The notes under the pieces are model-generated. The model was not told the origin of the DNA, made no database searches, and worked only from the letters and a program-made list of their open reading frames with translations. Shown piece after piece: positions 23,247 to 61,600 of a stretch of 64,000 nt of DNA. This DNA comes from Podarcis erhardii (taxonomy: Eukaryota): assembly GCA_964252035.1 (NCBI GenBank), contig CAXUOO010000189.1. One strand, written 5' to 3'. The position numbers were made by a program, and so were the translations under genes. Within the stretch, counting starts at the first letter, position 1. Each line of letters begins with the position of its first letter.

Positions 23247-25228
23247 ATGTCGTTCAGCAGCGAAGTTTCGCGGATGCTGCTGAGTGGAAAGACAGCCTCG
23301 CCAGGCCTCCAGCACAACCACGCGCACCACCACGCAGCGCTGAGCAGCAACAGCGCGAAAAGTTTGCTGCTGCATGCAAACCAGCTGCAAACTCGAGTTG
23401 GAGCGCTTTCTCCAGTTTACTCCTCAGGAAGTGGTGGAGGAGGTGGGGCGCGTTCAGATCCTGGGGGAAGAAGTGCCTCAGCTGTGAGTAGTGGTGGTGG
23501 GGGCTCCAGCAGCAGTGCAGTGTTGAGGGGGGGTTTGGTGGCTGTGGGTGGCAGTGTGCAGAAGAAGCGAGCTGCAGCAGCTGCAGCAGCTGCAGCTTCT
23601 TCTCTCGCTTCAGGAGTGGTGGCTAGCAGCAGCACTCTCAGCAACTACAGTGGCAGTAGTAGTGGCAGCAGTAGTCGCTCTTTCCTGCTTTCTGCAGCTC
23701 CTTCTTCTTCTTCTTCTTCTTCGGTAAGTGGCGGTTTCTTTGCTGCAGATGGGCAGCAGTTGCTCGTGCGCTTTCGCGGACAGCAAACTTCAGTCGGCTT
23801 TTTGCTGAACAAGTTAGTTGAGTTGCTCAAGCAACATGCGGGGCGCAGTCTGCATGTCAAGGAAGTCGAGAAACACCTCATTCAGGCTGGCTTCAGTTCT
23901 CTGCATCTCTTCTTCGCTGCTCGTACGTTTCCGTCGAAAAGTCTCTCATTCGATTCACTTTTTGGGAATTCGTCTCTTTTTCAACTGAAGCAGAGGAAGT
24001 TTTGACTTGCAGTGTGGTTGCTGCTGCATTGGTTGATCTTTCTTTGTTGCAGATCATGCACACACACAGACGCTTCCCGAGACGTTTCTTAATATATATA
24101 CTTTATATGTGTGTCTGCACGCATGCAGGGTGATGTCGATATTTTACTCTTCAACAAGTGTGCGTGCAATTTGGCGTTATTAGTTCTTCCACTCCACCCA
24201 CTGCTGCTGCACATAAATGTAGAGAGCCTATATCCATATATGCCTCTAGCACTCTCATATTCGCATACTGATTATACGGATGTACGTATAATATACATAT
24301 ATGGATGAATATATTGTTTGTCTCGACACGAAATCCAGCAGTGCAGGAACTCCTCAGTTCACGTATACGATATATAAAGAGATTTTTCTATGTGTTTAGA
24401 TTCCTATGGCTAGTAGGTTCTGAATTTCGCGCATGGCTGTGACAGGTTGGTATGCGACCTACAAGTTGTNNNNNNNNNNNNNNNNNNNNNNNNNNNNNNN
24501 NNNNNNNNNNNNNNNNNNNNNNNNNNNNNNNNNNNNNNNNNNNNNNNNNNNNNNNNNNNNNNNNNNNNNNNNNNNNNNNNNNNNNNNNNNNNNNNNNNNN
24601 NNNNNNNNGTAGTAGTAGTAGTTTTAGCTTGAAGATTTTGCAGCGGCAGCTGTATAGGGATGACTGTGCTTCGAGTGGATTTCTGCAGGAGAAAGATTTG
24701 ACAAGAAACACTCAGCATCGCTTCACATGCATTTTTAATAGTCGTTTAAACGGTCGATGTATGCATGCGTCAACGTGAAACCGCAGAAATATACTGACGC
24801 ATATGTTTATGGATACAGGCAGAATTTACGACAAAAATACTTCATTTGTTTCTGCTTGCAGCGACTTCAATAAAACACACACGAGTATGTCGCATGTATA
24901 TCATCCTAAATAGTACGACACACGGTCATGAAAACATAGATGTCGCCTCATATTCAAATATTCAAATACACATGCAGCAACCAAAATATACTCGCAGCAC
25001 TTCTGAATAGTGTAGAAAGGTGTTCCTTCTATTTTCACCAACAGTATCTGTATGTACACTGACGCATCAACAACCGTATGTACATAAATATATATATAAA
25101 TATATATATATGTAGCTTATGCATGCGGAACAGTATCATAGGAATGGGTCTGTTTGAGTTTCAAGCTACGCAGCACGTCTCGTATATATGAACTTGTAAA
25201 CAGGTAAGTTGCAACAAGCGTGTGCTGG

Positions 25229-40733: not shown

Positions 40734-41807
40734 AGAGAGAGAGAGAGAGAATACGACGGAGATGTCAACGCATTGTTCGTATAACGACATATGGAAATAC
40801 GTATATAAACATGTAGATATACGTATACGTGATCCAGATATATATGGCTTGCTCATCAGAATTCGACGCACTGCACGCTAACTCATTGGAATATACGTAT
40901 ACATGAAGTTACGTTCAGTGAGTATTAATAAGTCCGATTTATAGCTTACTTGGGCTTCAGCGCGGTGTACAACAGTGAGAACGATGATTCCAATAAGGCA
41001 GCACAGAAGGCCAATACAAAAGGCAGGCCAGTTTCCTGGTATCTCGTGAAGAACGAGTATTGAGCCTATAGTTCCGGAAGCAACTAAACAGCTGTTCACA
41101 GTAGGCACTACATACACTGCTTCATACCTGGAAAAACGAAACAAACATCCACATACAAGTGCATTGGGTAATACTACACGTATCTTATAATATCTATATC
41201 TATAGATCTACAAATATGTATTTATAGATCTATATATATGTATGGTAATGAGGATACGTATATGTATGCCACTAACGGCTGAAAAAAAGCTGTATATACA
41301 TTGCAATGTATATGTAAAGCTTGTAATCGAGGCAGAGTTGAACCGTAAATCAGTTTCTTTCTTGTTACGTCTCACCCTCTATTATCTGCCAGCTATTTCA
41401 CTGCTAGCTAAGGTATACATGAAAATGTACATGAACAAACATTTACGGAAGTATACAAAATTACCTGTATCTACTGCTACAGTTTCTTTCCACCCTCGTT
41501 CAGTGTCTCTGAACTAGTAATGTATTGAAACATATATTTGTAGTCGACGTTCTCTCATGATTCCTCCCTCTTACATTATGCTTTTTTTTTTACACTTTTA
41601 TATACCTTTGTACACATTCAACAGGCAAAAACATGTACACTCCAGCTCATTTGAATATAGAAATAAATATAAATATACTTCTGTTGCAAGCTTATTAAAG
41701 CTTGAATAGACATATATTCTTATTGATAAAGTCACCAGGTGCATGCGGCATGTGCATGCATACACCAATATAGAGGAAAAAAAAGAAGGAAAACGGCTGG
41801 CTGCTAC

Positions 41808-41839
<32 letters not shown>

Positions 41840-44800
41840 CTTGCTTTCTATCTATTGTATACGTTCATATGTACGAATGTTTTGGAAAGACGCCTCTGCA
41901 AATCTGCATAGTGTGTAAATCTTATGAGTAAAAAAAAGATTAGATGAAATGGCGTATAACGATTCATGTAGATGATATCAAAGTTAAAGCAATGATAGTT
42001 TTTGCTAATACGATACAGCCAAAATGAAAAAGAACAATGGAGACAGGAAACACTTTTTGCAGCCGCGTCTACGTTGGCATACAGTTACCATCAAACATAC
42101 GTACGTAAGTTGTACAAATACCCATTTATATATATATATACATATATATTGGTGATCAAGGTTTGTTATGGGCTCAAGTGAAGAGGAGGACAACACTCTT
42201 CGCACGAAGCGTATATGTAGTATATATACGTATACACATTGAACTTGTAACATCCTATTTCCGAATACTCTGTATATATATATATATGTATATTTTTACA
42301 TATATGGAGAGAAAGAGACATTTGTATCCAGCTGATTGTATATACATATGCATAAAGAAGTCAGAGTTTCTTTTTTTTTGGCTCAGAACTTACCGTTTTA
42401 GAGCGAGATTGAGGAAAATGAGCTGCGAAATCACCAGCATTCCTGTGCAAATAATCACTACATATGTGCGCCAGCTGCAGCACAACGGGTAACAAATGCA
42501 GCAAAGAAAGCTTTGAAAATGCTTTATCATTCAAAGTCGGCAGGAAAACACTAGAGCTTCAATCTACACCTGAAGCAAGAAAAGCAGCAGCTGCATACAA
42601 CTGTAGCAGCAGCAGAATTACATACAATGAGCGAAGTTGATTACAAAGAAGAAGAAGCTCGCATATTGAGAGCAAAAAAACAGCAATGAGGAAGCAGAAA
42701 TCGCAGGCAAATACACAAGGCGCAAGCGACATGCAAATATAGAGCAGAAGCATACAGTGGCGAAAACAGAAACATCCATGTAGAACACCGATGAGACAGA
42801 GGGAAAAGCGCCATATTGCTGAAACAGCAATTTGTAAAAATTCAAGTTCGGACACCTTGGGCCATACAAGTATAGGCACAGAAGTAGCAGAAAAGCGCAG
42901 CCGAAACGTCTCAACGGTCATATATCGAGAGTCGAAAAAACAAGCTTGATAGAAGCAGCAGGTTGATTTGAAAGCAGCAATTCAGCAACAGAAGCTGGTA
43001 TCGAAAGGAAGCAGCAGTAGTACCAGCTGCACTTTGTTTGGAAAACAGCACCTATGTAAGGCGTCTTACTTGGAAAAGACGGAACTTCGTCCAGCAAAAA
43101 GGTCCACAGCAATGATTGAAAAAAACTTTGCTGCGACGTTGGTGTTGCCTCCCAATAAACCAGAAGCCAACGCAGTGCCCAGTCTCTACAGCATCAAAAA
43201 CCGCACCAGCAAACCAGCACAGTTGCGCACTTTAGTGAAAAGTTGGATCTTTGCTGTCTGCCGTGTTTGCAGTTAAAAAGTAGTTCAGTGATGTACACAT
43301 CTCGATTTATATAGAGAGAAAGAGAGTTCTCTGATGTCTAACAACACGACCAGTGGCGGTGTGTACTTTTCAATTAGATATATGTAGAGAGACAGAATCG
43401 ATACACGCCAGCCGTACACGGCTTTATATATAGAGCGACTGCACTACGAATATAAGACACAAAGAAACCAGGAATACGGTAGAGCACACATCGCTCCAGT
43501 GCTGTAGAAGCAAGTAGCATACATGGCAGAGCTGTAACAGCAAGAAAAGCAGTTTTAGACCGACCGCAATAATATCAACAGCAAGCAGAGCTACTATCAG
43601 AGCTGACCGCTCAGAAACAGCATTGTAGCAACACAAGAAGCAGCAGCTCAGCAGCAGGAAATCAGTATGAGCGACCATAACAGTCTTTGCTCGACTACTG
43701 CAGGAGCAACTTAGCAGAAATTTGTCACAAGAATATTGCCTTTTTGGGCTCTACAAGAGAAAGCCAACAGCCCCGCATTGAAACAAGACCTACATAACAC
43801 TGCAGTAGCAGTAGTAGTCGCTACAAGACAACATACCTATATACAGCAAATACTTACATATATATAATCAGTGCTGCTGACTTATTGCAATGAAGATAAA
43901 TACTTGCAGTTGCGTGAGAATCTGCCTTTTGCACAGAGAGGTGGGAGACTCAGTCTTGCAACAGTCAGCGGTCTATAGAAAGCTTGGGCAGCAGCACTTA
44001 GCGGAGGCAGTGCAGGAAGACAAATTTTACAAAGAAGTACAGAGACATAGGCACAGAAATACAAGCAGTGACAGCGATTTCAGACTAGAAGCAATGCAGC
44101 AATAACACGCTGTGAAACAGCAAGCAGCCGCAACGCTTTCGTACGTCTATTTGGCATCGAATGGATGGCTTATCAGACTTTCTTTGCTTCACCACATCTG
44201 CAGCTGCAGCGCTACGAGCGAAAAAAAACCACAAGAAAACGTGAATGATAATTTGATACACTTTGCAGTGCAAGCAGCTGCTCTTATGCAAGACTGGTAG
44301 AAGCTGCTTAGCAGACGAGGCAGCGGAAAAAACCCATGCGTGCACCAATGCTACCAACAGAAACAGCAGAGCGCAGTTTCACGGCAGAAAGCAGCGATAG
44401 ACCGAGAATGTAGCACCAACACAGCTTTTCAGAGGCCTGTATTGAACTCGGAGCTCGATCGCGTCCCTTAAAAAGCACCACGAAAGAGTAGGAGCAATCG
44501 CGGAACTTGAAACCACAAGAAAGAGCACGATGGAGCAAGCAATGACTGCAACAGCAGTATTTTTCGACAGCAAGCACACCGTCACGTTCAGCACAAGAAA
44601 CAAGAGCGAATTCAGCGACGGCACAGCCAGTAGTAGCCGCACAAATGCAAAAGCTGAACTAAACAAGCAGCAACATAGTCACATCGCAGCAGCAACACCG
44701 ACCAGAGGTGTTTTACCATGAAAGTCGAAAAGCAAAACAGCAGATGCACCTGTCTAATAGCAAAAACTTACTCGTACGGAATACTCCCAGTCACCGAGAC

Positions 44801-47752
44801 TGCAGGGGTAGAGAGAGAACGCAGCCAAGAGAATAAGGAGCAGCAATACAGCCGACACAGATATGTAAGCGATCGCCTCTGGCGTGCGGGCGTAGGAATC
44901 AAAGACCGAAATATTCTCGATATCCGCCTGTTTACTGGAGAAACAAACAATCAAAATCACTCCGACCACCACTCCCACTGCGCCTAGGGCTTGCCACAAC
45001 CCCATTGGCTCTTTGAGCCAGAAATGAGCGATCAACACTGCCCAGAAGATGTGAACTCCCGCAAACGGAGTTACTATTGACTGAATACACATGCACATAT
45101 AATCAAAACAAGGAACAGTGGATGAAGCAGAGCAGCTCGGTAATTCTGCGGCGACGTTGAAACAAATGCAGCTATCAATACGTAGGTAAATGAATCGTGT
45201 CGCTACGCGAATATGTGTGTGAAAGTATTTCTGTGCTAGACGCACCCGCAAATGTAGATGTTTGTCGCTGCTCGAGTTTGTGTGAGATAGTATCAATATG
45301 CTAGACGCAGCCGCACCAGTAAGAAAAGTGCGTGTGACGTGCGAGCTGAGTGTTTTAGCAGGAAGAGCAGCACGCCAGTAGGATCGACTGCTACCCAACA
45401 AAACGCAGCGGCAGCTATAGCAGCAACAGGGCAGTAAAAAAGCAAAGAAATAGAAAACTGATTTTATTGAAAAAATCGTTGCAGCTGTGGTGAGGTAGAC
45501 GCAGCAACCATAGCAGGAGTACATCTGAACTAAATTAACAGCAGCTTTGGTCCCTCTCCACTGCAGCAGCTGCAGCACGCCCGCTGCGCGATACAGGTTT
45601 TAACGCACGGTAAAAACCAGCAAAACTGCAGCATACTAGAAGCGAGACTGCAACCACTCTTCTACCACTCAATAGCATCAGTAATAATAAGCTTGCGGAT
45701 GTCAAATATATAGCTCCAGCAGGTTCGGTATAAACAAGGGACATAGGATACAAAGTTGAGATTTATAACCATGCAGCGTCATCCGCATCAGCACTAAAAC
45801 TACTACTACTACTACTACCTGCAGCAAGACCACAACCACAAGCCTTTACCAGATTTCATTTTCAGCAAAAGACAAACAGCCTAGCACTGCATGCGAATGA
45901 GCACCTGCAACAAGAATATCCTACAGCACGCTACCTTCATAATATAATGTTACAACAGTGGCACACGCTCGAAGATTACCTAGTAGAAAAAAATAACGCG
46001 GTTATGGTGGTTGTCCTTTCAGGGTATATATCTATATACAACATGAGCAGCAAAACTCACGTGTTCAGTCACTGACAGGCAAAAGCAACAGCAGCCATTC
46101 AAGAGCACCACAAGTAACTCTGGCTATAAAATTAGAACAACAAGGAGTAAAGAGGGATTACGGAGACACCCTTACAACGTAAATTGATGCACTAACGGAC
46201 TTGCCCTTGTATAGTACATACACGTATATATATATATATATGAACACATGCAGTTACGACTTGTGTGTATCTCCGTGTTATCTTTGTCGAGACAGAGACG
46301 GCCGAAGAAGATCTATATACATATAGACAGCCACATTCAGCAGAGACAGACGATCAAACCTATATAGATCGGCAGTTGGCTCAAAAAAACCCCAATACCA
46401 GAGATACACGACTACGGTTTGTGAAACAAAAGCGATCTTACAGAAGGAGCAAACAAAAGGCCTATGAAAGTTAGGAGCGGATCCAGTATGATCGTCAAAC
46501 ACATGCCTATGACGAAAATAGGATTCTCAAGCATCTTCCTCGCCTTCACCACTGCCCCTGCGTCCACGTAGGAACGCCGCACCATGGTGTCTGCAGCAGC
46601 ACCAGCAAAAATAGCAGCAACAGCAACAAAGGTCTCATTAGCTGTCTGCCATAAACAAGCCTCAATAACTCATGCAGAAACATGCGATGGCAAAAACAGC
46701 GGCAAACTCGCAGCAGTGAAAACAGCAGCCTCTATAACAACTGCAACAAGTTCTCCAAACCAGCAGAAAAGGCGACAGCAAACATGAAGAGAGGCAGTCG
46801 AACTACGGTAAGAAATCAGCTGCAGCAACGAAGCCGCATCTGAGCAATTATCTATAGCAGCAGCATCACTTCAAAACACGATCTTGGTGCTGCAGCACTC
46901 CTAGCGGACCACGGAGTGAGATGTGCGAAGAAAGATATATAGGCAAAACGGGACCACTGAAAGAAGATAAACCTGATGCTTTTTAGTGTTACGATTGTTC
47001 TATATACACGCGTAGAAGGCGTTCATACATATGTATATATGGAAGTATACATTTGAAGTCATATGTTCATCTAAAGGGCCAGACATATACGCAACACTGC
47101 ACAAAGGAGAAGGACTTCAGAAAAATATTACGCAAGAACTCAGGACAAAGGATTTAGTATGGCCGAATGCCAAATTTGAGGAGGGGGAAAGTATAGTACA
47201 AAAAGAGCGTAGTGGGGAATAAATAGATGGAACTTTTATAGCAGAAGCGTGATTTGAGGGAGACAAGGAAAAAATATTTGCAATGGCGTAGCGTCTGTGA
47301 AACTCGGCTTATCAACAAACTCGGATTTCGTAATAGCAGAGAAGAGACGGAAGAAAGCATGGTTTCCACCTGCTAGTCCAAATAAGCATGTAAACAAGAA
47401 TTGGAGAATACCTATACTAGATAAAATATGAAGTGATAAGAGAGAGATATGCACACAGGGGGTGATAAAGGGACGCAAAAATGAAAAGAGCGGGGCTTAC
47501 AGATATATTAAACATAGTGAGAGCCATAAACACACAGGACAAATATGCTGTAGACGAAGATGAAAACTAGATGTCTGAACACAATGTGACAGAGACAAAA
47601 ATTGTCGTTGAGGTAGCTTGAAGTTACTGCAGTGGAATGTGTTTGCGTTTTGGATAGAAAAAGGTAGTTTTCTTGCCTCCTAGTGCGCCTCCAAAAGAGC
47701 CGAAAAAGACAACGATGACTCCCACATACCACAGACGACTAAATTCTCCCAT
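36973..47752 (-). CDS. NIPA: NIPA-family (DMT superfamily) magnesium transporter
   Basis: Confident exons: 47752-47677, 46590-46442, 45080-44772, 43185-43070, 42474-42394, 41127-40950. They give GSFGGALG|DTMVRR, LLFAPS|SIVTPFAGVHIFWAVLIAHFWLKEP, SGLLGGNTNVAAK, SQLIFLNLALKR|YEAVYVVP and multiple TM helices, matching NIPA motifs. A tentative phase-consistent C-terminal chain follows: 40877-40829, 40529-40481, 39397-39334, 38755-38622, 37330-37230, 37064-36973 (lower confidence, about 0.4). Confidence 0.88.
38091..38266. repeat. 88-bp direct tandem duplication
   Basis: GGTTCGGTGTTCCCGACTATTTTTCATATGTAAAGTATGCACATGTCTAC-(TA)n occurs at 38091 and 38179, in an intron of the NIPA gene. Confidence 0.93.
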
Positions 47753-53307: not shown

Positions 53308-56300
53308 ATGGAGACATTTTCAGAAGATAAACCCTCAGCAAGCTCCCCGCTGGTCACTCCTCGGTGCCTATCCAGTTCGTCGATGCCTCGTCGACGACGC
53401 CTTTCTACCTGTGTACCGCCAGAATCCCTTTCAAATTCTGTTAGCGATAACCTCGGAGGAAGCCAATCAGGTCCAAAAAGCTCTCTTTTACTTTCTGAGA
53501 CAAACGTTTCCACTGATACAACGGTCCTCGATGATTTGACGAGGAAAATTTGTTGGACAAAGAAGTCTACAGTGAAAAGGTTGTCAGCAGATCGATGCTT
53601 TCCCGGAGCTGCAGCCTGCGGCAAGGTGGAGGAAGCGGAGATCCAGCATTACGTCCCAGCGGACGTCGTTGAAAGCGATGTGAAGTCCAAGGAGATTGAA
53701 GAAGTTGTTACGTCCGGAATAGGCTCCATTGGCGTGCAATCTAAAGTTCATTCGGAAAAGGCGCCTTTACAAAAGAGCGCATCAAGGGTTGTCAAGGCGT
53801 CTGATACACAGGGCGTCCATACAAACGAGGTATTTAAAGTCAATGCTGCTTGCTCGAGCGGTGTTGGCGCATACCCAGAAGCTTCGTCTGGTGTTACCCA
53901 ACCTCAATTTAAAACAGGCTTGCGTCATTCACGCTTGCAAAAAGTTCGTACCCTTGTAAAGCACTTGTACTTCCTGCTTCCTGCTCTTTCAAGCATCGCA
54001 ATGCTTCATTCGCTTTGGTATCCACTGCTTCCGATATGCATTCGGAGCTACACCGACCAGCTTATTCCGTCCCGCATCATCTTCACTTCTCAAAACCCGC
54101 CCCTCCACGCTTTTCACACTAGCGTGCAGAGTCCTTTCGATACCACCTCTACTAATGGCAAACACTCGCGAAATCAACAATATGATCATGGGAATTTGGA
54201 CAAAATTGTCCAAGCTGCGAACCCAGCTGCAAGTGGAACATCAAGTTTATCTTGGTATTCCGCTGAAGCGCTAAAGGGCGAGTTTCCACAATACGCAGCA
54301 CATAGCGTTCCCACGCCTGCTGCGCTCATCGCTCACTCTAATGAATTTAAGAAAGAAATAATTCGCGTGGTAGAGGACGTGTACGTCGCTGTCGGATACG
54401 GCTTGGCAAACTGTGTGATTGTGAATGCGACAGAGGGTCTAGTGATCATTGACGCAATGGAAAGCACTGCCACAATGAGCGCTGTTTGGGACGCGTGGCG
54501 GCAATTGCCCTACAGCGACAAGCCAGTGAAAGCTCTCATATACACTCACTTTCATACAGATCATGTATTTGGAGCCGCTGCAGTGGTTCAACCAAATGTA
54601 ACTGAAATCCATGCGTACTGGCTCACTGATGCAGAGATGAGCAAAGTGTTTACACTCACAGCAGGTTCGACTTACAGACGCTCAATGAGACAATTCGGTG
54701 TATTCATTGACTCCCCAGATTTTGTAAACGCTGGAATAGGTCCTACATTACACTACAGCAGCAACGAAGAGATTGGTACCGTGCTGCCTACGCATATCAT
54801 GCGTGAGGAGAGGAAAACTCTGCATATTGCGGGTGTTTCAATTGAGCTGATTCACGCTCCTGGAGAAAGCAAAGACCAACTTGTCGTATGGCTGAAAGAG
54901 AAAAAACTGCTCGTAGGCGCCGATAACTTGTACAAATCCTTTCCAAACATCTACGCCATACGGGGAACAGAGACGCGCGATTGCAACGATTGGATAGCTT
55001 CGCTTGATCTTATGCGTTCTCTTGAACCTGAGCACTTAGTCTTAGGTCACACCCGTCCGCTCGCGGGGAAAGACTATATAAATGCAACGTTGATGGCTTA
55101 CCGAGATGCCATACAATTCATACATGACCAGACTGTACGGTTCATGAACAAGGGTTACTACGCAAACGACATTGCACATATCATAAAGCTTCCGCCGCAT
55201 CTAGCTTCTCACCCCTTCTTACAACCTTTTTACGGAACCGTTCCGTGGGCTGTGAAGGCGATTTTCACACAATATGTCGGGTGGTATAGCGGCAACCCAG
55301 AAGACCTTGCTGTCGTGAGCACACGAGAGAAAGCTGAGCTTTTACTCAGTTTGGCGGGAAGCCTCCAAAACCTTTTAGCTCATGCACTCAAAAATTTGAG
55401 AGAAGATCGAGTTCAACAAGCTCTTGAACTTGCTAGTGCTGCTCATATTATAGCACCGCAATCTGAGGAGGCAAAGACTCTGAGAATACTCGCTCTCAGA
55501 GCTTGCGCTGCTAAACAAGAAGCGGCCACAGGTGCGCGACGTATAGAAAGAATACTGGCAGGTCAGGGGGGGGGTTTATGTAAGTTTGAATCCAGCTCAA
55601 CCTAGCGATGCAAGCAACCTGTTGTAGGATAATGCAATTGCGCGTGAAGTTTTTTTTAGAATATACTCGAAGGCACTCTCCTGTCGACAGTACACAAGCA
55701 CCATTAAGCAAACTATATATATGATAAATCATGAAAACACACTCGTACAGAGTTAGTTTGAAAGGGAATCACAAACGCTGTTGTGCAACTAATGCAAAAA
55801 CGACACATGAAAAAGAAGGTTCATCGAAAAAAATGCACTTTGGCTCTTATGCTTCGCATCGAATTTCTTGTTTTTTTTTAGTGCGCCGTCAGGTCAAATC
55901 TCTTCCTTGCATGATGTTTCCAATTCTGACGTTTATGTGCATAGACTACAATCCAGTGCGATGCTAGAAGCATTTTACAGAGAGACGCCTGATATACCCG
56001 ACATTTACACCCGAGCGTACTAGTTAATTACTTCCATGTAATTGGACGGTGTGCAAGTTTACTGTAGCCGCATGCGGTTCAGATTTCTACGTGTGAAAAC
56101 CTGCTGTTAATCTGTGTCGACAGCTCTAGTTCTCTTCCCCTTTTTCCTGCCTGTGTTACTGCGGTGATGCTCAATGGTCATGTTACTGACACTATTTCAC
56201 TGAGGCGTTTGAGATTTTCGTTCTTTGTAAAGACATTTCCGAAGTTATGCTCACCGATTTTCTAGCTTCAGCACAGCAGCGTTGATAGTATTACACCATT

Positions 56301-57296
56301 GCGGATATCAACTGCACTATGGCATATTTGATGTTATTGTACACCCGTGAAACCTCACAGGCGGGACGACGTCTCTGCAGTTTGTCTAATAAGCCCCCGG
56401 ACTACTCAGTGATTGGTATGCAGTAGTGTATTCGGGTGTTCGAGCGGCGCTGAGGAACGAGAACCCAACTCAGCACTCTAGTAGAAGTGGAGAATTTTGT
56501 ATCGATTGGAAACAACTAACCTTGCAGCTGAAGCTGCCACAAACACTCCCTGCCCTAAACTGTCTATGTCATTTATGCTTGATTCGCGTTAAGATAGAAA
56601 GAATTCTTTTTTAGCAGGATCATACAACAGCAAAGCGTGCGCAGAAAAGCGTGCTGGTCGGATCTACAGGCGTACCAGAACGGGTCTGCTCATTGTGGTA
56701 TAATTCTACATGAATTCTCAATTTGTGGTGTCGAGCAGCTTACTAGTTGAGAGAGATGCCAAAACTTTGTAGAGCAGCCAAGGTTTAGATGAATCAACAG
56801 CGTCGACACATGAGTGTATGCGCGTATATGAATGTTTCAACAAGTTGTTTGAAAATGCATGTTTCGTTTGCTTTCTTCAGGTCGCAACTGGCTTTTGACT
56901 GCAGCCCTTGAATTGGAGGGAAGGGCGAATTTAAAGCTAAGTGACTCTCAGAAACGCGAAACCTTGTCGAAGCTATCCATGCAGCAAATGTTTGAATTGC
57001 TCCCAGTGCGGCTAGTAGCTGAGAAAGCACTCGACTTTTCTTGTATACTAGAATTCAAGTTTACTGACGTAAATGAGCGCTTATGTGTTCACTATCGCAA
57101 AGGTATAGCTTACCAGCGCTGGCCTTGCGAATCAGATCCTGACGCAATAGTGCAGAGCTCTAGGAATGTTTGGCTTGGCATTGTCAATAATGAAAGAAGT
57201 CTTCCCTTTGCAGTTCTAAAGGGAGATGTCAAGCTAAGTGGCTCGATTTTCACGTTGTTGAAAGCTCTACAATACGTGGAGCTTGATGCTGATTGA
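53308..57296 (+). CDS. sdsA: Alkyl/aryl sulfatase of the SdsA1/BDS1 family (metallo-beta-lactamase fold, dimerisation domain, SCP2-like C-terminal domain), 2 exons, about 879 aa
   Basis: Exon 1 53308-55531 and exon 2 56881-57296, joined by a phase-1 GT-AG intron giving EAATG|RNWLLTAALEL. Motifs: VGYGLANCVIV, VIIDAME, YTHFHTDH (HxHxDH), HAPGESKDQ, GADN, IYAIRGT..RD..DW, LGHTRP, YRDAIQFIHDQTVRFMNKG, FYGTVPWAVKAIFTQYVGWYSGNP. The C-terminal ...WLGIVNNERSLPFAVLKGDVKLSG resembles SCP2. Confidence 0.93.
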
Positions 57297-58233: not shown

Positions 58234-58668
58234 ATGCGAACAATCGTGTACGACAGAAAGTTTCACTCTTTTTACAGGCTTGCGTATGCGTAGCGTTCCA
58301 CAGGTTTACATCATGAGCAAGTGGAAAACAGTTGATTATAAACGCTATGTAGAGTATTACAAAGCGGACTACTTAGCTTGTATCTTCGATTTCTCCTCCT
58401 AGTCAGGCATGTGCATTGACAGTTGTGGTGCATACAACGTTTGGTGTGCTTTACCGGGCCAAGACTCCATTTTTATTGTACGATGTTGACTGAACAGCCA
58501 CACTAGGGGTTCGTTACAACGACAGTTACGACGATCGACGTCCGACGACGACAATCATTTCCTCACTGTGTAGACGATGACTGGTCCTTTCGAGCAATAA
58601 ATCCTTATTTTCAACAACGTATATATATATACTCACAAGCTCAGGAATCGCTCATGGATGCAAACTTA

Positions 58669-61600
58669 TCAAACAAGTTGAGGCTTGTCCTCTATGCGCA
58701 AAATAGAGAGAAATTCTTCTTCGGAGAAACTAAGGAGGCGCGCGGCCTCCATGTGCGCCTTTTGCTTCTTGAGAATGTCTATCAATTTCATTTGTTTTTT
58801 GAACCCTATTATGAGATCATTCCTCTGGCTTTGTAATCGCTTATTCTCTACTATGAGCTTGTCTATCTCCTTTTGTAGAGTTGAAGACTCGTCCTTGTTG
58901 CGGCTCGTATGATTCTGCAGCTTGTCTTTCAGGGATTGAGCTTCTTCTGTTAATCGATTCAACCGAACATCTTTACTGCTGAATTCCGCAGCAGTATTTT
59001 TGGCTGCTATTGCCAGCCTGGATTAGAAAACAAAAACCATCCAGAACAAACCATATAGATGGGAGACACGCGAACATATCATCGTGTGCGCAACTGTACA
59101 GCAGAAGGCAAGCATGTGGTTTTGAAGCCAGCTAGGATGTTCGGCACAATAATAAGCGTGCCTTTTACGAACGGGTTCATACGCATGCGATTCACCAACG
59201 CATTGTAATTTGAAGGGTTTTGATGAAAGTTGTCCAAGGAACTTCGATTTTGCTGTTCACGAGTGATCATGCATTCTGAAGCGGAATAGCATACCCGTCA
59301 GAATATCGCTAATTGTGCATCCGTATATCAGATATTCATGTATATATATATATATATATATATGTGGATTTGTTCATATGCGAGTTGTATGTTGTTGTAG
59401 AGTTGTACAATATGGTAATGGTTCTACGAAAATTACTTAAGGTAGAGGAAATAGCTTAAAAGGCTTACAGATTCGTCCGGATATCTGTTTATATATATAT
59501 ATATACATATATATATATGAAAATATCTATACAAAATTCTAGGACAGATACAACTTTAACGTCTCTATATTTATACATATATATATATAGTAGGATCTGC
59601 ACAAGCTCGTAAACACAAAATCCAATTTGAATGAATGACTATATAAAGAGTATATGAATATATATATTTATATGTATATATATATATGTTTATATTTATA
59701 TACATACATGCATATATCCGTACAAGCCTTACAGCATCAGGTTTGATTACAATCAAAAAAAGTGTACGCGCTCGCAGATTTTAGAATGAGCATCTGTATT
59801 GTACAACGCTTGTGAATTTGTGCTTTTCTTCTTGGCGGCAGGACACAGGTTTAGAATGGACATGATGCATCACACACGAATACAGGCGTCTTGTCGCTGG
59901 AAATTCACACGCGCGATACGATACGAGAAGAAGGCCGTCCACTCAGGTTGACTTTGCTTCTACACAATCACCTCTACGCACTCCCAATTAGGAAAAATTT
60001 TTCAAATATACCTCCGGCAACAGAGTCCCACCCTGCAAATGAAAGAGCTGAAGCTACAGCGGAAGTTGAAATCTAATCTTTGCAATTCCGTCGTGGTTTC
60101 CGCAAATAGGAAAATTAATACGAGTGTTCCTGAAAGTCGCCGTTTTGGCGTCTATGAATGAAAAGTTCAAGCAGAATGTTGAGTAGACTTTATCAGAAGT
60201 TGCAGCATGTTTTAGGGATTTGCAACTGCTGCAAAGAAAATTGCTTCTGCTTGAAAATCATGTGTTGCTGGCATGTCAGCCTAGTCTGCACTATTTTTAC
60301 CTACCCATCCGTTCAACTCTGCTTCAAGGATCTCTTCAATACATTATGCAAAATGTGCCCTTTTCGCAAAAAATCGACTAGTGACACACGCAGTTTCCTT
60401 CTGCTTCCTTCCTCGATATGCATGTCAAGACCCTTTACTGTGTGTAGAAGTTGCTGACTTTTTGTTGAATAGCAACCTTTTATACTGGCATTCCAGCGCT
60501 CACAAGAGACCAAGATTTTTGAAGCAAGAAGCTGGCGTTTTAGTGCTCCAGGAAGAAAGAACAATGAAGTGCTTGGAAACAAATTACTCAGTTACCTCTG
60601 ACCTGCAACGTTAACCGTGTGTTAGCACCACTTTCATTTTTCTCCTCAACATTTAACGCGAATAGACTTGATTTCACGAATGTTACACTCCTTCAATAAC
60701 GAGTTTTTCAAATATAGATCAAGCCATGAAATCTTAGGGGTCTCTCTCAAGAACTGAAGTCAAATACTTAGATCTAACTAGACGCTCAAATCAAAAGTAC
60801 AGAGAAAAAGCAACAAAGCAACACAACCTACTACATGTGTTGTGCGGCACGCACAGAACGGACTGCAAATGAATATATGACTATGGAGCGAACATGGCCG
60901 CCGTGACAACTTAAGATGCTCATCCCTCTTCTCCACTCCTACCTGTCATTTTCGGCCTGCAGTGTGCTCAGGCTATTTTCAAAGTCTCGGTATCTGCAGT
61001 ACATTCCGCATGCAATTTTTTCAGTCGATCAACTTGGCTTTGCAAGTTGTTAATATGTTTCTTCTGCTCCTCATTCTCCTCGATCAAGCATCGGTTTTCA
61101 CTTTTGCTTTGGTGGAGCTCTTCTTCGAGCCTCCGCATTTCTTTGAGCCTTGCGTCAAGTTCTTCTTGTAGGGACAGCATGCGGCTTCTCTGGATTCGCA
61201 TGGCAGAAGTCAAACTTTCTACTGTCTCACCGACAAGAAGCCCAGTTTTGCTCGATGCGCTGTGCGTTCTCCGATGGAATGTCCTCATGTACTCATCCCG
61301 CACTTTACTACCTACTGAACAGGCAACGTACGGATCCTTCAACACGGCTTCTCGCATTACAAGACCATGCCGTTTTGCGGCAGCCTCTTCGCTGGGTGCG
61401 CAGACGAAAAATCTTGCTTTTCACTGTGTTTTTGGTTTTCGCAAGAGGTGACGTCCAGATTGCCCAAAATACTGTTTTGCTTAGATAAAGGCGCAAATGC
61501 GGCTCCTTCAACCTGGTTTTTTGCGGAAGCCGCTGGAGATAGTTTGAGCGTGCCGTGCGAGCACGCCGCGAACTGCTTAATTTGCAACACTCTGCTTCAG

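What the first reader, a model, noticed from the sequence alone, without database searches (positions are those of the whole stretch)
53308..57296. Bacterial-type SdsA1 alkyl sulfatase in a coccidian genome: probable horizontal acquisition
The protein has the full three-domain architecture of Pseudomonas SdsA1, with intact HxHxDH and downstream metal ligands. The yeast member BDS1 is an established bacteria-to-eukaryote transfer. Here about 740 codons are uninterrupted and there is a single intron in the sulfatase coding region, against 7-12 exons in the neighbouring genes to the left, which fits a transferred gene with later intron gain. By inference, it could scavenge sulfate or detoxify sulfated lipids and surfactants in the gut or during environmental oocyst stages. 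I am not aware of such an activity being characterised in coccidia.
Basis: partly seen in the sequence, partly recalled or inferred. Interest (0 to 1): 0.75.

Follow-up and report, generated by a model that had tools for sequence, protein, structure and literature searches.

The report
Coccidian alkyl-sulfatase-like gene, vertically inherited
The window holds a real, intact two-exon gene for a zinc-dependent alkyl-sulfatase-like enzyme in a Toxoplasma-related parasite. It is the ordinary counterpart of a gene already annotated in Toxoplasma and Eimeria, and it belongs to a group shared with other eukaryotes, so it is not a fresh bacterial acquisition.

Summary
ORF 53308-55531 plus last exon 56881-57296 (GT..AG intron of 1349 nt) encodes about 879 aa. 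It has a metallo-beta-lactamase domain, an alkyl-sulfatase dimerisation domain and an SCP2-like C-terminal domain. HFHTDH, the other metal ligands and the sulfate-binding loop are intact.

The claim of horizontal acquisition by coccidia is not supported:
- Orthologues at 75-77% identity exist in Toxoplasma (TGME49_203340, "alkyl sulfatase, putative"), Neospora, Hammondia and Besnoitia. More distant ones occur in Eimeria, Selenidium, Siedleckia and Cardiosporidium.
- The locus is syntenic with T. gondii.
- The intron has the same position and phase in Toxoplasma and Eimeria.
- In a mixture-model ML tree the apicomplexans form one clade. It sits inside a clade (95/91) that also holds amoebozoans, tunicates, spiralians and an alga-like eukaryote, and no named bacterium.
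- An AU test rejects joining the apicomplexans to the nearest bacterial clade (p 5e-7).

The protein is only about 25-28% identical to SdsA1, SdsAP and YjcS and forms a separate subfamily (ADN/FPN signature). Coccidian members carry a long N-terminal tail followed by a transmembrane segment, which predicts a type II membrane protein. Substrate and activity are untested. Published proteomics places the Toxoplasma and Eimeria proteins in oocysts.

The parts
53308..55531 (+). First coding exon as read here (741 codons plus 1 base). The ATG at 53308 is the first start after an in-frame stop. The true 5' end and any 5' intron are unverified.
53308..53961 (+). Hydrophilic, poorly conserved N-terminal tail (aa 1-218). 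Predicted cytosolic because basic residues cluster just before the membrane segment.
   Evidence: No Pfam or NCBIfam match.
53962..54042 (+). Hydrophobic segment (aa 219-245), the predicted single transmembrane anchor. Homologous segments lie 90-125 aa before the domain in other coccidia.
   Evidence: tblastn conservation with Toxoplasma, Besnoitia and Neospora starts at 53947.
54400..55050 (+). Metallo-beta-lactamase fold catalytic domain (Pfam PF00753).
   Evidence: AlphaFold model best matches SdsAP, YjcS, SdsA1 and Pisa1.
54547..54564 (+). HFHTDH metal-binding motif (HxHxDH).
54919..54978 (+). Sulfate-binding loop ADNLYKSFPNIYAIRGTETR. It matches the SulfAtlas S3 pattern. It has Asp where SdsA1 and YjcS have the bridging Glu, and Pro where they have His.
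55165..55530 (+). Alkyl-sulfatase dimerisation domain (PF14863).
55532..56880 (+). Intron, GT..AG, 1349 nt, phase 1, inside the Gly codon before RNW(L/F/Y)LTAALE. Same position and phase in T. gondii and Eimeria stiedai.
56881..57296 (+). Last exon: SCP2-like alkyl-sulfatase C-terminal domain (PF14864, about 56952-57272). Stop TGA at 57294-57296.

Best explanation
This is the vertically inherited orthologue, in a sarcocystid coccidian, of the gene annotated in Toxoplasma gondii as TGME49_203340 ('alkyl sulfatase, putative' / 'metallo-beta-lactamase domain-containing protein') and in Eimeria tenella as ETH_00036640.

Shown here: it encodes an approximately 879-aa protein with a poorly conserved N-terminal tail, one hydrophobic segment, an MBL-fold domain with a complete binuclear-metal site and sulfate-binding loop, a dimerisation domain and an SCP2-like lipid-binding domain.

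Inferred:
- It is a type II membrane protein whose catalytic part faces the lumen of the secretory pathway or the outside.
- It forms a dimer.
- The SCP2-like domain recruits an aliphatic sulfate ester, and a metal-activated water cleaves it to alcohol plus sulfate, as in SdsA1.
- By analogy with its Toxoplasma and Eimeria orthologues, it is probably made mainly in oocyst and sporozoite stages.

The gene belongs to a distinct subfamily, about 25-28% identical to SdsA1, SdsAP and YjcS. The eukaryotic members of this subfamily (Apicomplexa, Amoebozoa, tunicates, spiralians, an alga-like lineage, Chromera/Corallochytrium) cluster together apart from the named bacteria. It was therefore not acquired by coccidia from bacteria.
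For: - Domains and ligands.
- Fold: AlphaFold model (pLDDT 79.5) best matches SdsAP, YjcS, SdsA1 and Pisa1 at E about 2e-24 and TMq 0.73, well ahead of other MBLs.
- Orthologues: Toxoplasma, Neospora, Hammondia and Besnoitia at 75%, E. stiedai 53%, Selenidium 50%, Cardiosporidium 48%; Siedleckia.
- Synteny NIPA - sulfatase - CCDC39-like with T. gondii, and sulfatase - CCDC39-like with the coccidian contig in the pika assembly.
- Shared intron position and phase.
- Careful IQ-TREE (LG+C20 PMSF): apicomplexans form one clade (90/92). They sit inside a 44-row clade (95/91) with Stygamoeba, tunicates, Tubulanus, Capitella, Mytilus and an alga-like contig, and no named bacterium.
- Smaller tree: Api + Stygamoeba + an unnamed EukProt protist at 100/98.
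- AU test rejects Api + nearest bacterial clade (dlnL 64.7, p 5e-7).
- Hydrophobic segment conserved before the domain in all members.
- Oocyst proteomics for the orthologues: PMC3616887, PMC10707475, PMC12784848.
Against: - No enzyme of this subfamily has been assayed, so the sulfatase activity is inferred from conserved residues only.
- Identity to characterised enzymes is low: 27% to YjcS over 403 aa, and the C-terminal exon gives no BLASTP hit to YjcS.
- 18 rows inside the 'eukaryotic' clade are unnamed metagenome or Logan sequences that could be bacterial.
- One true bacterial sequence (P0157) floats near the clade on a long branch.
- Chromera's homologue does not group with the apicomplexans, so simple vertical descent from a myzozoan ancestor is not shown.
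- No RNA data exist for this organism.
- The membrane topology is a hydropathy and positive-inside argument only.
Confidence: 0.8

Rival explanations
1. One reading: a bacterial SdsA1-type gene was transferred into coccidia, or this coccidian lineage, and later gained one intron.
For: The family is predominantly bacterial. After the apicomplexans, the best named hits in the first search are bacterial MAG proteins at 46-49% identity. The gene is intron-poor next to an intron-rich neighbour.
Against: - Orthologues occur across Apicomplexa, well beyond coccidia.
- Synteny and intron position are conserved.
- The clade nests with other eukaryotes.
- The AU test rejects the bacterial sister grouping.
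Confidence: 0.03
2. An ancient, independent transfer from a bacterium into the apicomplexan stem lineage. On this view the apparent 'eukaryotic clade' is a set of separate transfers, from closely related and poorly sampled bacteria or between eukaryotes, as proposed for tunicates and spiralians.
For: - Distribution among eukaryotes is patchy.
- No named Plasmodium, piroplasm, Cryptosporidium, ciliate or dinoflagellate sequence appeared in the lists shown.
- Chromera does not group with the apicomplexans.
- Deep branches inside the clade are short and partly unresolved.
- Unnamed metagenome rows lie inside the clade.
- PMC13390645 argues for HGT in the tunicate and spiralian members.
Against: - No named bacterium lies inside the 44-row clade (95/91).
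- The sister of the apicomplexans is a pair of protist sequences (100/98).
- The N-terminal anchor architecture is shared.
Confidence: 0.15
3. The protein has the sulfatase fold but another job: hydrolysis of a different ester (phosphodiester, lactone, thioester) or mainly lipid binding through its SCP2-like domain.
For: - It is about 25-28% identical to assayed enzymes.
- The subfamily-wide changes Glu to Asp at the bridging ligand and His to Pro in the sulfate loop.
- No member of the subfamily has been assayed.
- MBL-fold enzymes are functionally diverse.
Against: - All metal ligands, and the Asn, Tyr and both Arg of the sulfate loop, are invariant or nearly so across the subfamily.
- The loop fits the SulfAtlas S3 pattern, which allows D and P at those positions.
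- Clade-mates from tunicates hit the SulfAtlas S3 HMM at 1e-109 to 1e-125 (PMC13390645).
Confidence: 0.25
4. Bacterial contamination or mis-assembly placed a bacterial gene on this scaffold.
For: The scaffold sits in an assembly that mixes a lizard host and a parasite.
Against: - A spliceosomal GT..AG intron lies at a position shared with Toxoplasma and Eimeria.
- Flanking genes are colinear with T. gondii.
- Identity to sarcocystid proteins is 75%.
Confidence: 0.01

Closest known systems
Toxoplasma gondii TGME49_203340 (formerly TGME49_003340) 'alkyl sulfatase, putative', with its Neospora, Hammondia and Besnoitia orthologues and Eimeria tenella ETH_00036640
   Same: 75% identity over the catalytic and dimerisation part. 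Same three domains, same last-intron position and phase, same flanking genes, and the same N-terminal tail plus hydrophobic segment (in the 914-931-aa models).
   Different: The intron is 1349 nt here against 283 nt in T. gondii. The N-terminal 210 aa are not alignable. The locus is about 2-3 times more spread out. One T. gondii model (798 aa) splices out the hydrophobic segment.
Type III / SulfAtlas S3 alkylsulfatases SdsA1 (P. aeruginosa), SdsAP, Pisa1 and YjcS (E. coli)
   Same: MBL catalytic domain, dimerisation domain and SCP2-like domain. HxHxDH, a further Glu and His ligand, and the Y-x-x-R-G-x-x-x-R sulfate loop. They are the best structural matches.
   Different: Only 24-28% identity. 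Asp replaces the bridging Glu (ADN versus AEN) and Pro replaces the loop His (FPN versus LHN). The window protein is membrane-anchored with a long N-terminal tail instead of a cleaved periplasmic signal peptide. It forms a separate clade.
Tunicate and spiralian S3 'linear primary-alkylsulfatase-like' genes (Ciona KY21.Chr4.175 and others; PMC13390645)
   Same: They fall in the same eukaryote-rich clade in my trees. They share the ADN/FPN signature and an N-terminal hydrophobic segment about 25-30 aa before the domain.
   Different: About 590-625 aa, without the long N-terminal tail. They were interpreted in that paper as HGT candidates without protist sampling.
Saccharomyces cerevisiae BDS1
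   Same: Same overall family. It is cited as a bacterial-to-yeast transfer in several papers found.
   Different: From background knowledge, not tested here, it belongs with the SdsA1/YjcS-type branch rather than with the subfamily described here.

Membership tests
Type III / SulfAtlas S3 alkylsulfohydrolases (SdsA1-like) | MBL-fold catalytic domain with HxHxDH | tested here: met
   PF00753 at 3.5e-19. HFHTDH at aa 414-419. The model matches SdsAP, YjcS and SdsA1 at E about 2e-24.
Type III / SulfAtlas S3 alkylsulfohydrolases (SdsA1-like) | Remaining metal ligands (Glu after PG, bridging acidic residue, distal His) | tested here: met
   E (PGE), D (GADN; Glu in SdsA1 and YjcS) and H (GHTRP) are invariant across the subfamily.
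Type III / SulfAtlas S3 alkylsulfohydrolases (SdsA1-like) | Sulfate-binding loop pattern of Barbeyron et al. 2016 | tested here: met
   ADNLYKSFPNIYAIRGTETR satisfies every fixed position of the published pattern (pattern read, sequence; checked by eye).
Type III / SulfAtlas S3 alkylsulfohydrolases (SdsA1-like) | Dimerisation domain and SCP2-like C-terminal domain | tested here: met
   PF14863 at 2.2e-30 and PF14864 at 1.2e-10.
Type III / SulfAtlas S3 alkylsulfohydrolases (SdsA1-like) | At least 30% identity over about 600 residues to SdsA1 (the operational recruiting rule of SulfAtlas 2016) | tested here: not met
   27% to YjcS over 403 aa. 24-25% to SdsA1 and 28% to SdsAP in Foldseek alignments. 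Clade-mates from tunicates nevertheless hit the current S3 HMM strongly (PMC13390645). I therefore file it as a separate subfamily of the S3 kind, not as an SdsA1 orthologue.
Type III / SulfAtlas S3 alkylsulfohydrolases (SdsA1-like) | Hydrolysis of alkyl sulfate esters | not testable with these tools
Coccidian TGME49_203340 orthogroup | Orthology: closest relatives, conserved neighbours, shared intron | tested here: met
Gene acquired by coccidia through HGT from bacteria | Nested within, or sister to, a bacterial clade to the exclusion of other eukaryotes | tested here: not met
   AU test p 5e-7 against grouping with the nearest named bacterial clade.
Gene acquired by coccidia through HGT from bacteria | Absent from related eukaryotic lineages | tested here: not met
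   Present in gregarines, blastogregarines, Nephromycida, Amoebozoa, Metazoa, Chromera and Corallochytrium.

The most novel reading that the evidence does not exclude
The membrane-anchored ADN/FPN subfamily of S3-like sulfatases may be a single old eukaryotic gene family. It is shared by Apicomplexa, Amoebozoa, Holozoa/Metazoa and algae, and was recently read as separate HGTs in tunicates and spiralians. On this reading it was lost many times, and in coccidia it was rebuilt with a long cytosolic tail and used in the oocyst stage to turn over natural alkyl or lipid sulfates.
Probability: 0.3. Interest if true: 0.45.

Novelty: new member of a known kind. Interest (0 to 1): 0.25.

Why it matters
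As an HGT claim it does not stand, which removes a false lead. Three smaller points remain.

1. An uncharacterised enzyme that looks catalytically competent is conserved across tissue-cyst and intestinal coccidia and has been detected in oocysts. It could be relevant to oocyst biology, with no homologue reported in deuterostomes other than tunicates (PMC13390645).
2. The tree indicates that the tunicate and spiralian "HGT" sulfatases share a clade with several protist lineages. This bears on how those animal genes are interpreted.
3. It is another case where a bacterial-looking gene on a parasite scaffold inside a vertebrate assembly could be misread.

Tried and rejected
- Literature search for TGME49_203340, for localisation or fitness data: nothing in the held library.
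- NCBIfam scan: only generic MBL models far below their cut-offs, and nothing for the N-terminal tail or the C-terminal exon.
- RNA evidence: the only run holding the stretch is a DNA-type holder kept as contigs, probably the source sample.
- AU test on the 80-row set did not finish in two attempts. It was repeated on 34 rows.
- Context look-ups for unnamed clade members. P0145 is eukaryotic, with FancD2 and ABA4-like neighbours. P0157 is bacterial, with hrcA-grpE-dnaK-dnaJ neighbours. P0140 and P0126 are uninformative.
- Bacterial contamination was rejected on intron and synteny evidence.
- The exons were handled separately.
Full report
**What is there**

The region holds two ORFs on the + strand: 53308..55605 (765 aa) and 56859..57296 (145 aa).

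- Pfam places a metallo-beta-lactamase domain (aa 365-581, 3.5e-19) and the alkyl-sulfatase dimerisation domain (aa 620-741, 2.2e-30) in the first ORF.
- It places the alkyl-sulfatase C-terminal/SCP2 domain (1.2e-10) in the second ORF.
- The nearest solved structures by sequence are E. coli YjcS (5.8e-43), SdsAP (5.5e-42), SdsA1 (7.5e-39) and Pisa1. The second ORF matches the C-terminal domains of Pisa1 and SdsAP.
- An AlphaFold model of the catalytic plus dimerisation part (mean pLDDT 79.5) finds these same alkylsulfatases first (E about 2e-24, TMq 0.73). Ordinary MBLs follow at E about 1e-12.

**Gene model**

tblastn of orthologues ends the first exon at 55531-55533 and starts the last exon at 56874-56881. 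The sequence shows G|GTGCGC at 55531/55532 and TTCTTCAG|G at 56880/56881.

- The intron is therefore 55532-56880 (1349 nt, GT..AG, phase 1).
- The CDS is 2640 nt, giving 879 aa plus stop.
- No RNA run holds this stretch, so the 5' third is unverified. One T. gondii model has an extra intron there, and the pika-assembly relative has an extra intron further downstream, opposite window position about 54522.

**Active site**

- HFHTDH lies at aa 414-419.
- Glu in PGE, Asp in GADN and His in GHTRP align with the metal ligands of SdsA1 and YjcS.
- The bridging Glu of SdsA1 and YjcS (AEN) is Asp here, and the loop His (LHN) is Pro (FPN). Both changes are invariant across the named members of the subfamily, bacterial and eukaryotic alike.
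- The loop ADNLYKSFPNIYAIRGTETR satisfies the SulfAtlas S3 sulfate-loop pattern, which allows D and P at those positions.
- Identity to YjcS is 27% over 403 aa. The C-terminal exon gives no BLASTP hit to YjcS.
- This is an S3-like enzyme of a separate subfamily, not an SdsA1 orthologue.

**Who else has it**

The word search returned these hits:

| Source | Identity |
|---|---|
| Protein labelled Ochotona princeps | 77% |
| Neospora, Hammondia, Toxoplasma, Besnoitia | 75% |
| Eimeria stiedai | 53% |
| Selenidium serpulae | 50% |
| Cardiosporidium cionae | 48% |
| About 570-aa bacterial MAG proteins | 46-49% |

Two EukProt transcriptomes (TSA prefixes GHVT and GHVS) also gave hits.

- An exhaustive HMMER search with an apicomplexan profile gave 6546 hits. 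The apicomplexan clusters scored above 600 bits and the next hit scored 498.
- Names for 30 representatives show that the next relatives are largely eukaryotic:
  - Amoebozoa: Stygamoeba, Thecamoeba, Pelomyxa.
  - Blastogregarine: Siedleckia.
  - Tunicates: Ciona, Styela, Clavelina.
  - Spiralians: Tubulanus, Capitella, Mytilus.
- A second word search with a eukaryote profile added many molluscs, Owenia, Corallochytrium and Chromera velia.
- One unnamed member (P0145) lies on a 36-kb contig beside FancD2 and ABA4-like genes, so it is eukaryotic. Another (P0157) lies in an hrcA-grpE-dnaK-dnaJ-dapB row, so it is bacterial.

**Trees**

*80 rows, 397 columns, IQ-TREE LG+C20+F+G4 PMSF.*
- All 17 apicomplexan rows form one clade (90/92).
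- Their sister is Stygamoeba plus an unnamed EukProt protist (90/69).
- These lie inside a 44-row clade (95/91). It holds the metazoan rows, the alga-like group and 18 unnamed rows, but no named bacterium.
- The named Desulfobacterota/Pseudomonadota MAG proteins form their own clade (100/99).

*34 rows.* Apicomplexa + Stygamoeba + the unnamed protist has 100/98 support.

*AU test.* It rejects holding the apicomplexans together with the nearest named bacterial clade (dlnL 64.7, p 5e-7). The group was chosen after seeing the tree.

*Caveats.*
- Deep branches inside the eukaryote-rich clade are short.
- Pelomyxa and Thecamoeba fall outside or at its edge.
- P0157 floats on a long branch.
- Chromera groups with Corallochytrium and the alga-like rows rather than with the apicomplexans.

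**Vertical inheritance inside coccidia**

- The T. gondii locus (L001) is colinear with the window: NIPA-type Mg transporter (window 37.2-47.7 kb), then the sulfatase, then a CCDC39-like gene (58.6-61.4 kb).
- The 'pika' contig keeps sulfatase - CCDC39-like.
- The last intron sits in the same Gly codon, in the same phase, in T. gondii (L001 12331/12615) and in E. stiedai (L002, G|GTATTT ... TTCAG|GG).
- Intron poverty is thus an old, shared feature of this gene and not a mark of recent arrival.

**Architecture and likely mode of action**

- Every member examined has a hydrophobic segment before the domain.
- In bacteria, amoebozoans, metazoans, Chromera and Siedleckia it lies at the very N-terminus, 20-30 aa before the domain.
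- In most coccidian members examined it lies 90-135 aa before the domain and is preceded by 130-250 hydrophilic residues.
- In the window it is aa 219-245. Five Lys/Arg occur in the 15 residues before it, against two after it.
- I infer a type II membrane protein with a cytosolic tail and a luminal or extracellular, dimeric, metal-dependent sulfate-ester hydrolase. Its SCP2-like domain would hold the aliphatic chain, as described for SdsA1 (PMC5066984; PMC5426288).
- These steps are inference. Nothing of this subfamily has been assayed.

**What is already known**

- TGME49_003340 (now TGME49_203340), 'alkyl sulfatase, putative', is among the 154 putative oocyst/sporozoite-specific proteins of T. 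gondii. Its mRNA is 8-fold higher in unsporulated oocysts (PMC3616887).
- ETH_00036640, 'alkyl sulfatase', appears in E. tenella oocyst proteomes (PMC10707475, PMC12784848).
- A 2026 paper treats the tunicate and spiralian members as S3 alkyl sulfatases and HGT candidates, linking them to natural alkyl sulfates of ascidians (PMC13390645). As far as I read it, it had no protist sampling.
- SulfAtlas called eukaryotic S3 members 'very rare'.

**Context**

Earlier notes of this scan say the genome is a wall-lizard assembly with a co-assembled coccidian. In my tree the window is sister to the 'Ochotona' sequence and lies outside (P0007, (Toxoplasma, Besnoitia)). That makes it a sarcocystid. The stretched introns and spacers would fit a Sarcocystis-like genome, but that is a guess.

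**Verdict**

- The family assignment is supported, as a distinct subfamily.
- The HGT-into-coccidia interpretation is not supported.
- The gene is a new member of an already annotated, uncharacterised coccidian orthogroup.

Noticed in passing
L007 (GCA_030435755.1, contig JAUDYK010000317.1, 48 kb), protein P0001: A RefSeq-style protein named 'linear primary-alkylsulfatase-like [Ochotona princeps]' is the window protein's closest relative (77%). Its contig keeps the coccidian sulfatase - CCDC39-like gene order. It is almost certainly a sarcocystid parasite contig inside the pika assembly, mislabelled as a mammalian gene.
   Followed up: partly
proteins P0358 (Chromera velia) and P0357 (Corallochytrium limacisporum): The homologues attributed to an alveolate alga and to a holozoan protist are 81% identical to each other. 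They group with an alga-like metagenome lineage, not with the apicomplexans. Possible causes are contamination of one data set or a recent eukaryote-to-eukaryote transfer.
   Followed up: no
L001 10700-11032 (T. gondii MAS) against window 53947-54258: The 798-aa T. gondii model (P0004) splices out the stretch that encodes the conserved hydrophobic segment. The 914-aa VEG model, Neospora and Besnoitia keep it. One of the public T. gondii models is probably wrong, or the anchor is alternatively spliced.
   Followed up: partly
window 37200-47750 (-) and 58600-61400 (-): The flanking genes are a NIPA-type magnesium transporter and a CCDC39-like gene. They are colinear with T. gondii but spread over about 2-3 times more DNA. 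The window-wide G+C is 40%, against 49% at the T. gondii locus.
   Followed up: partly
window 24470-24608: A run of 139 N (assembly gap or masked).
   Followed up: no
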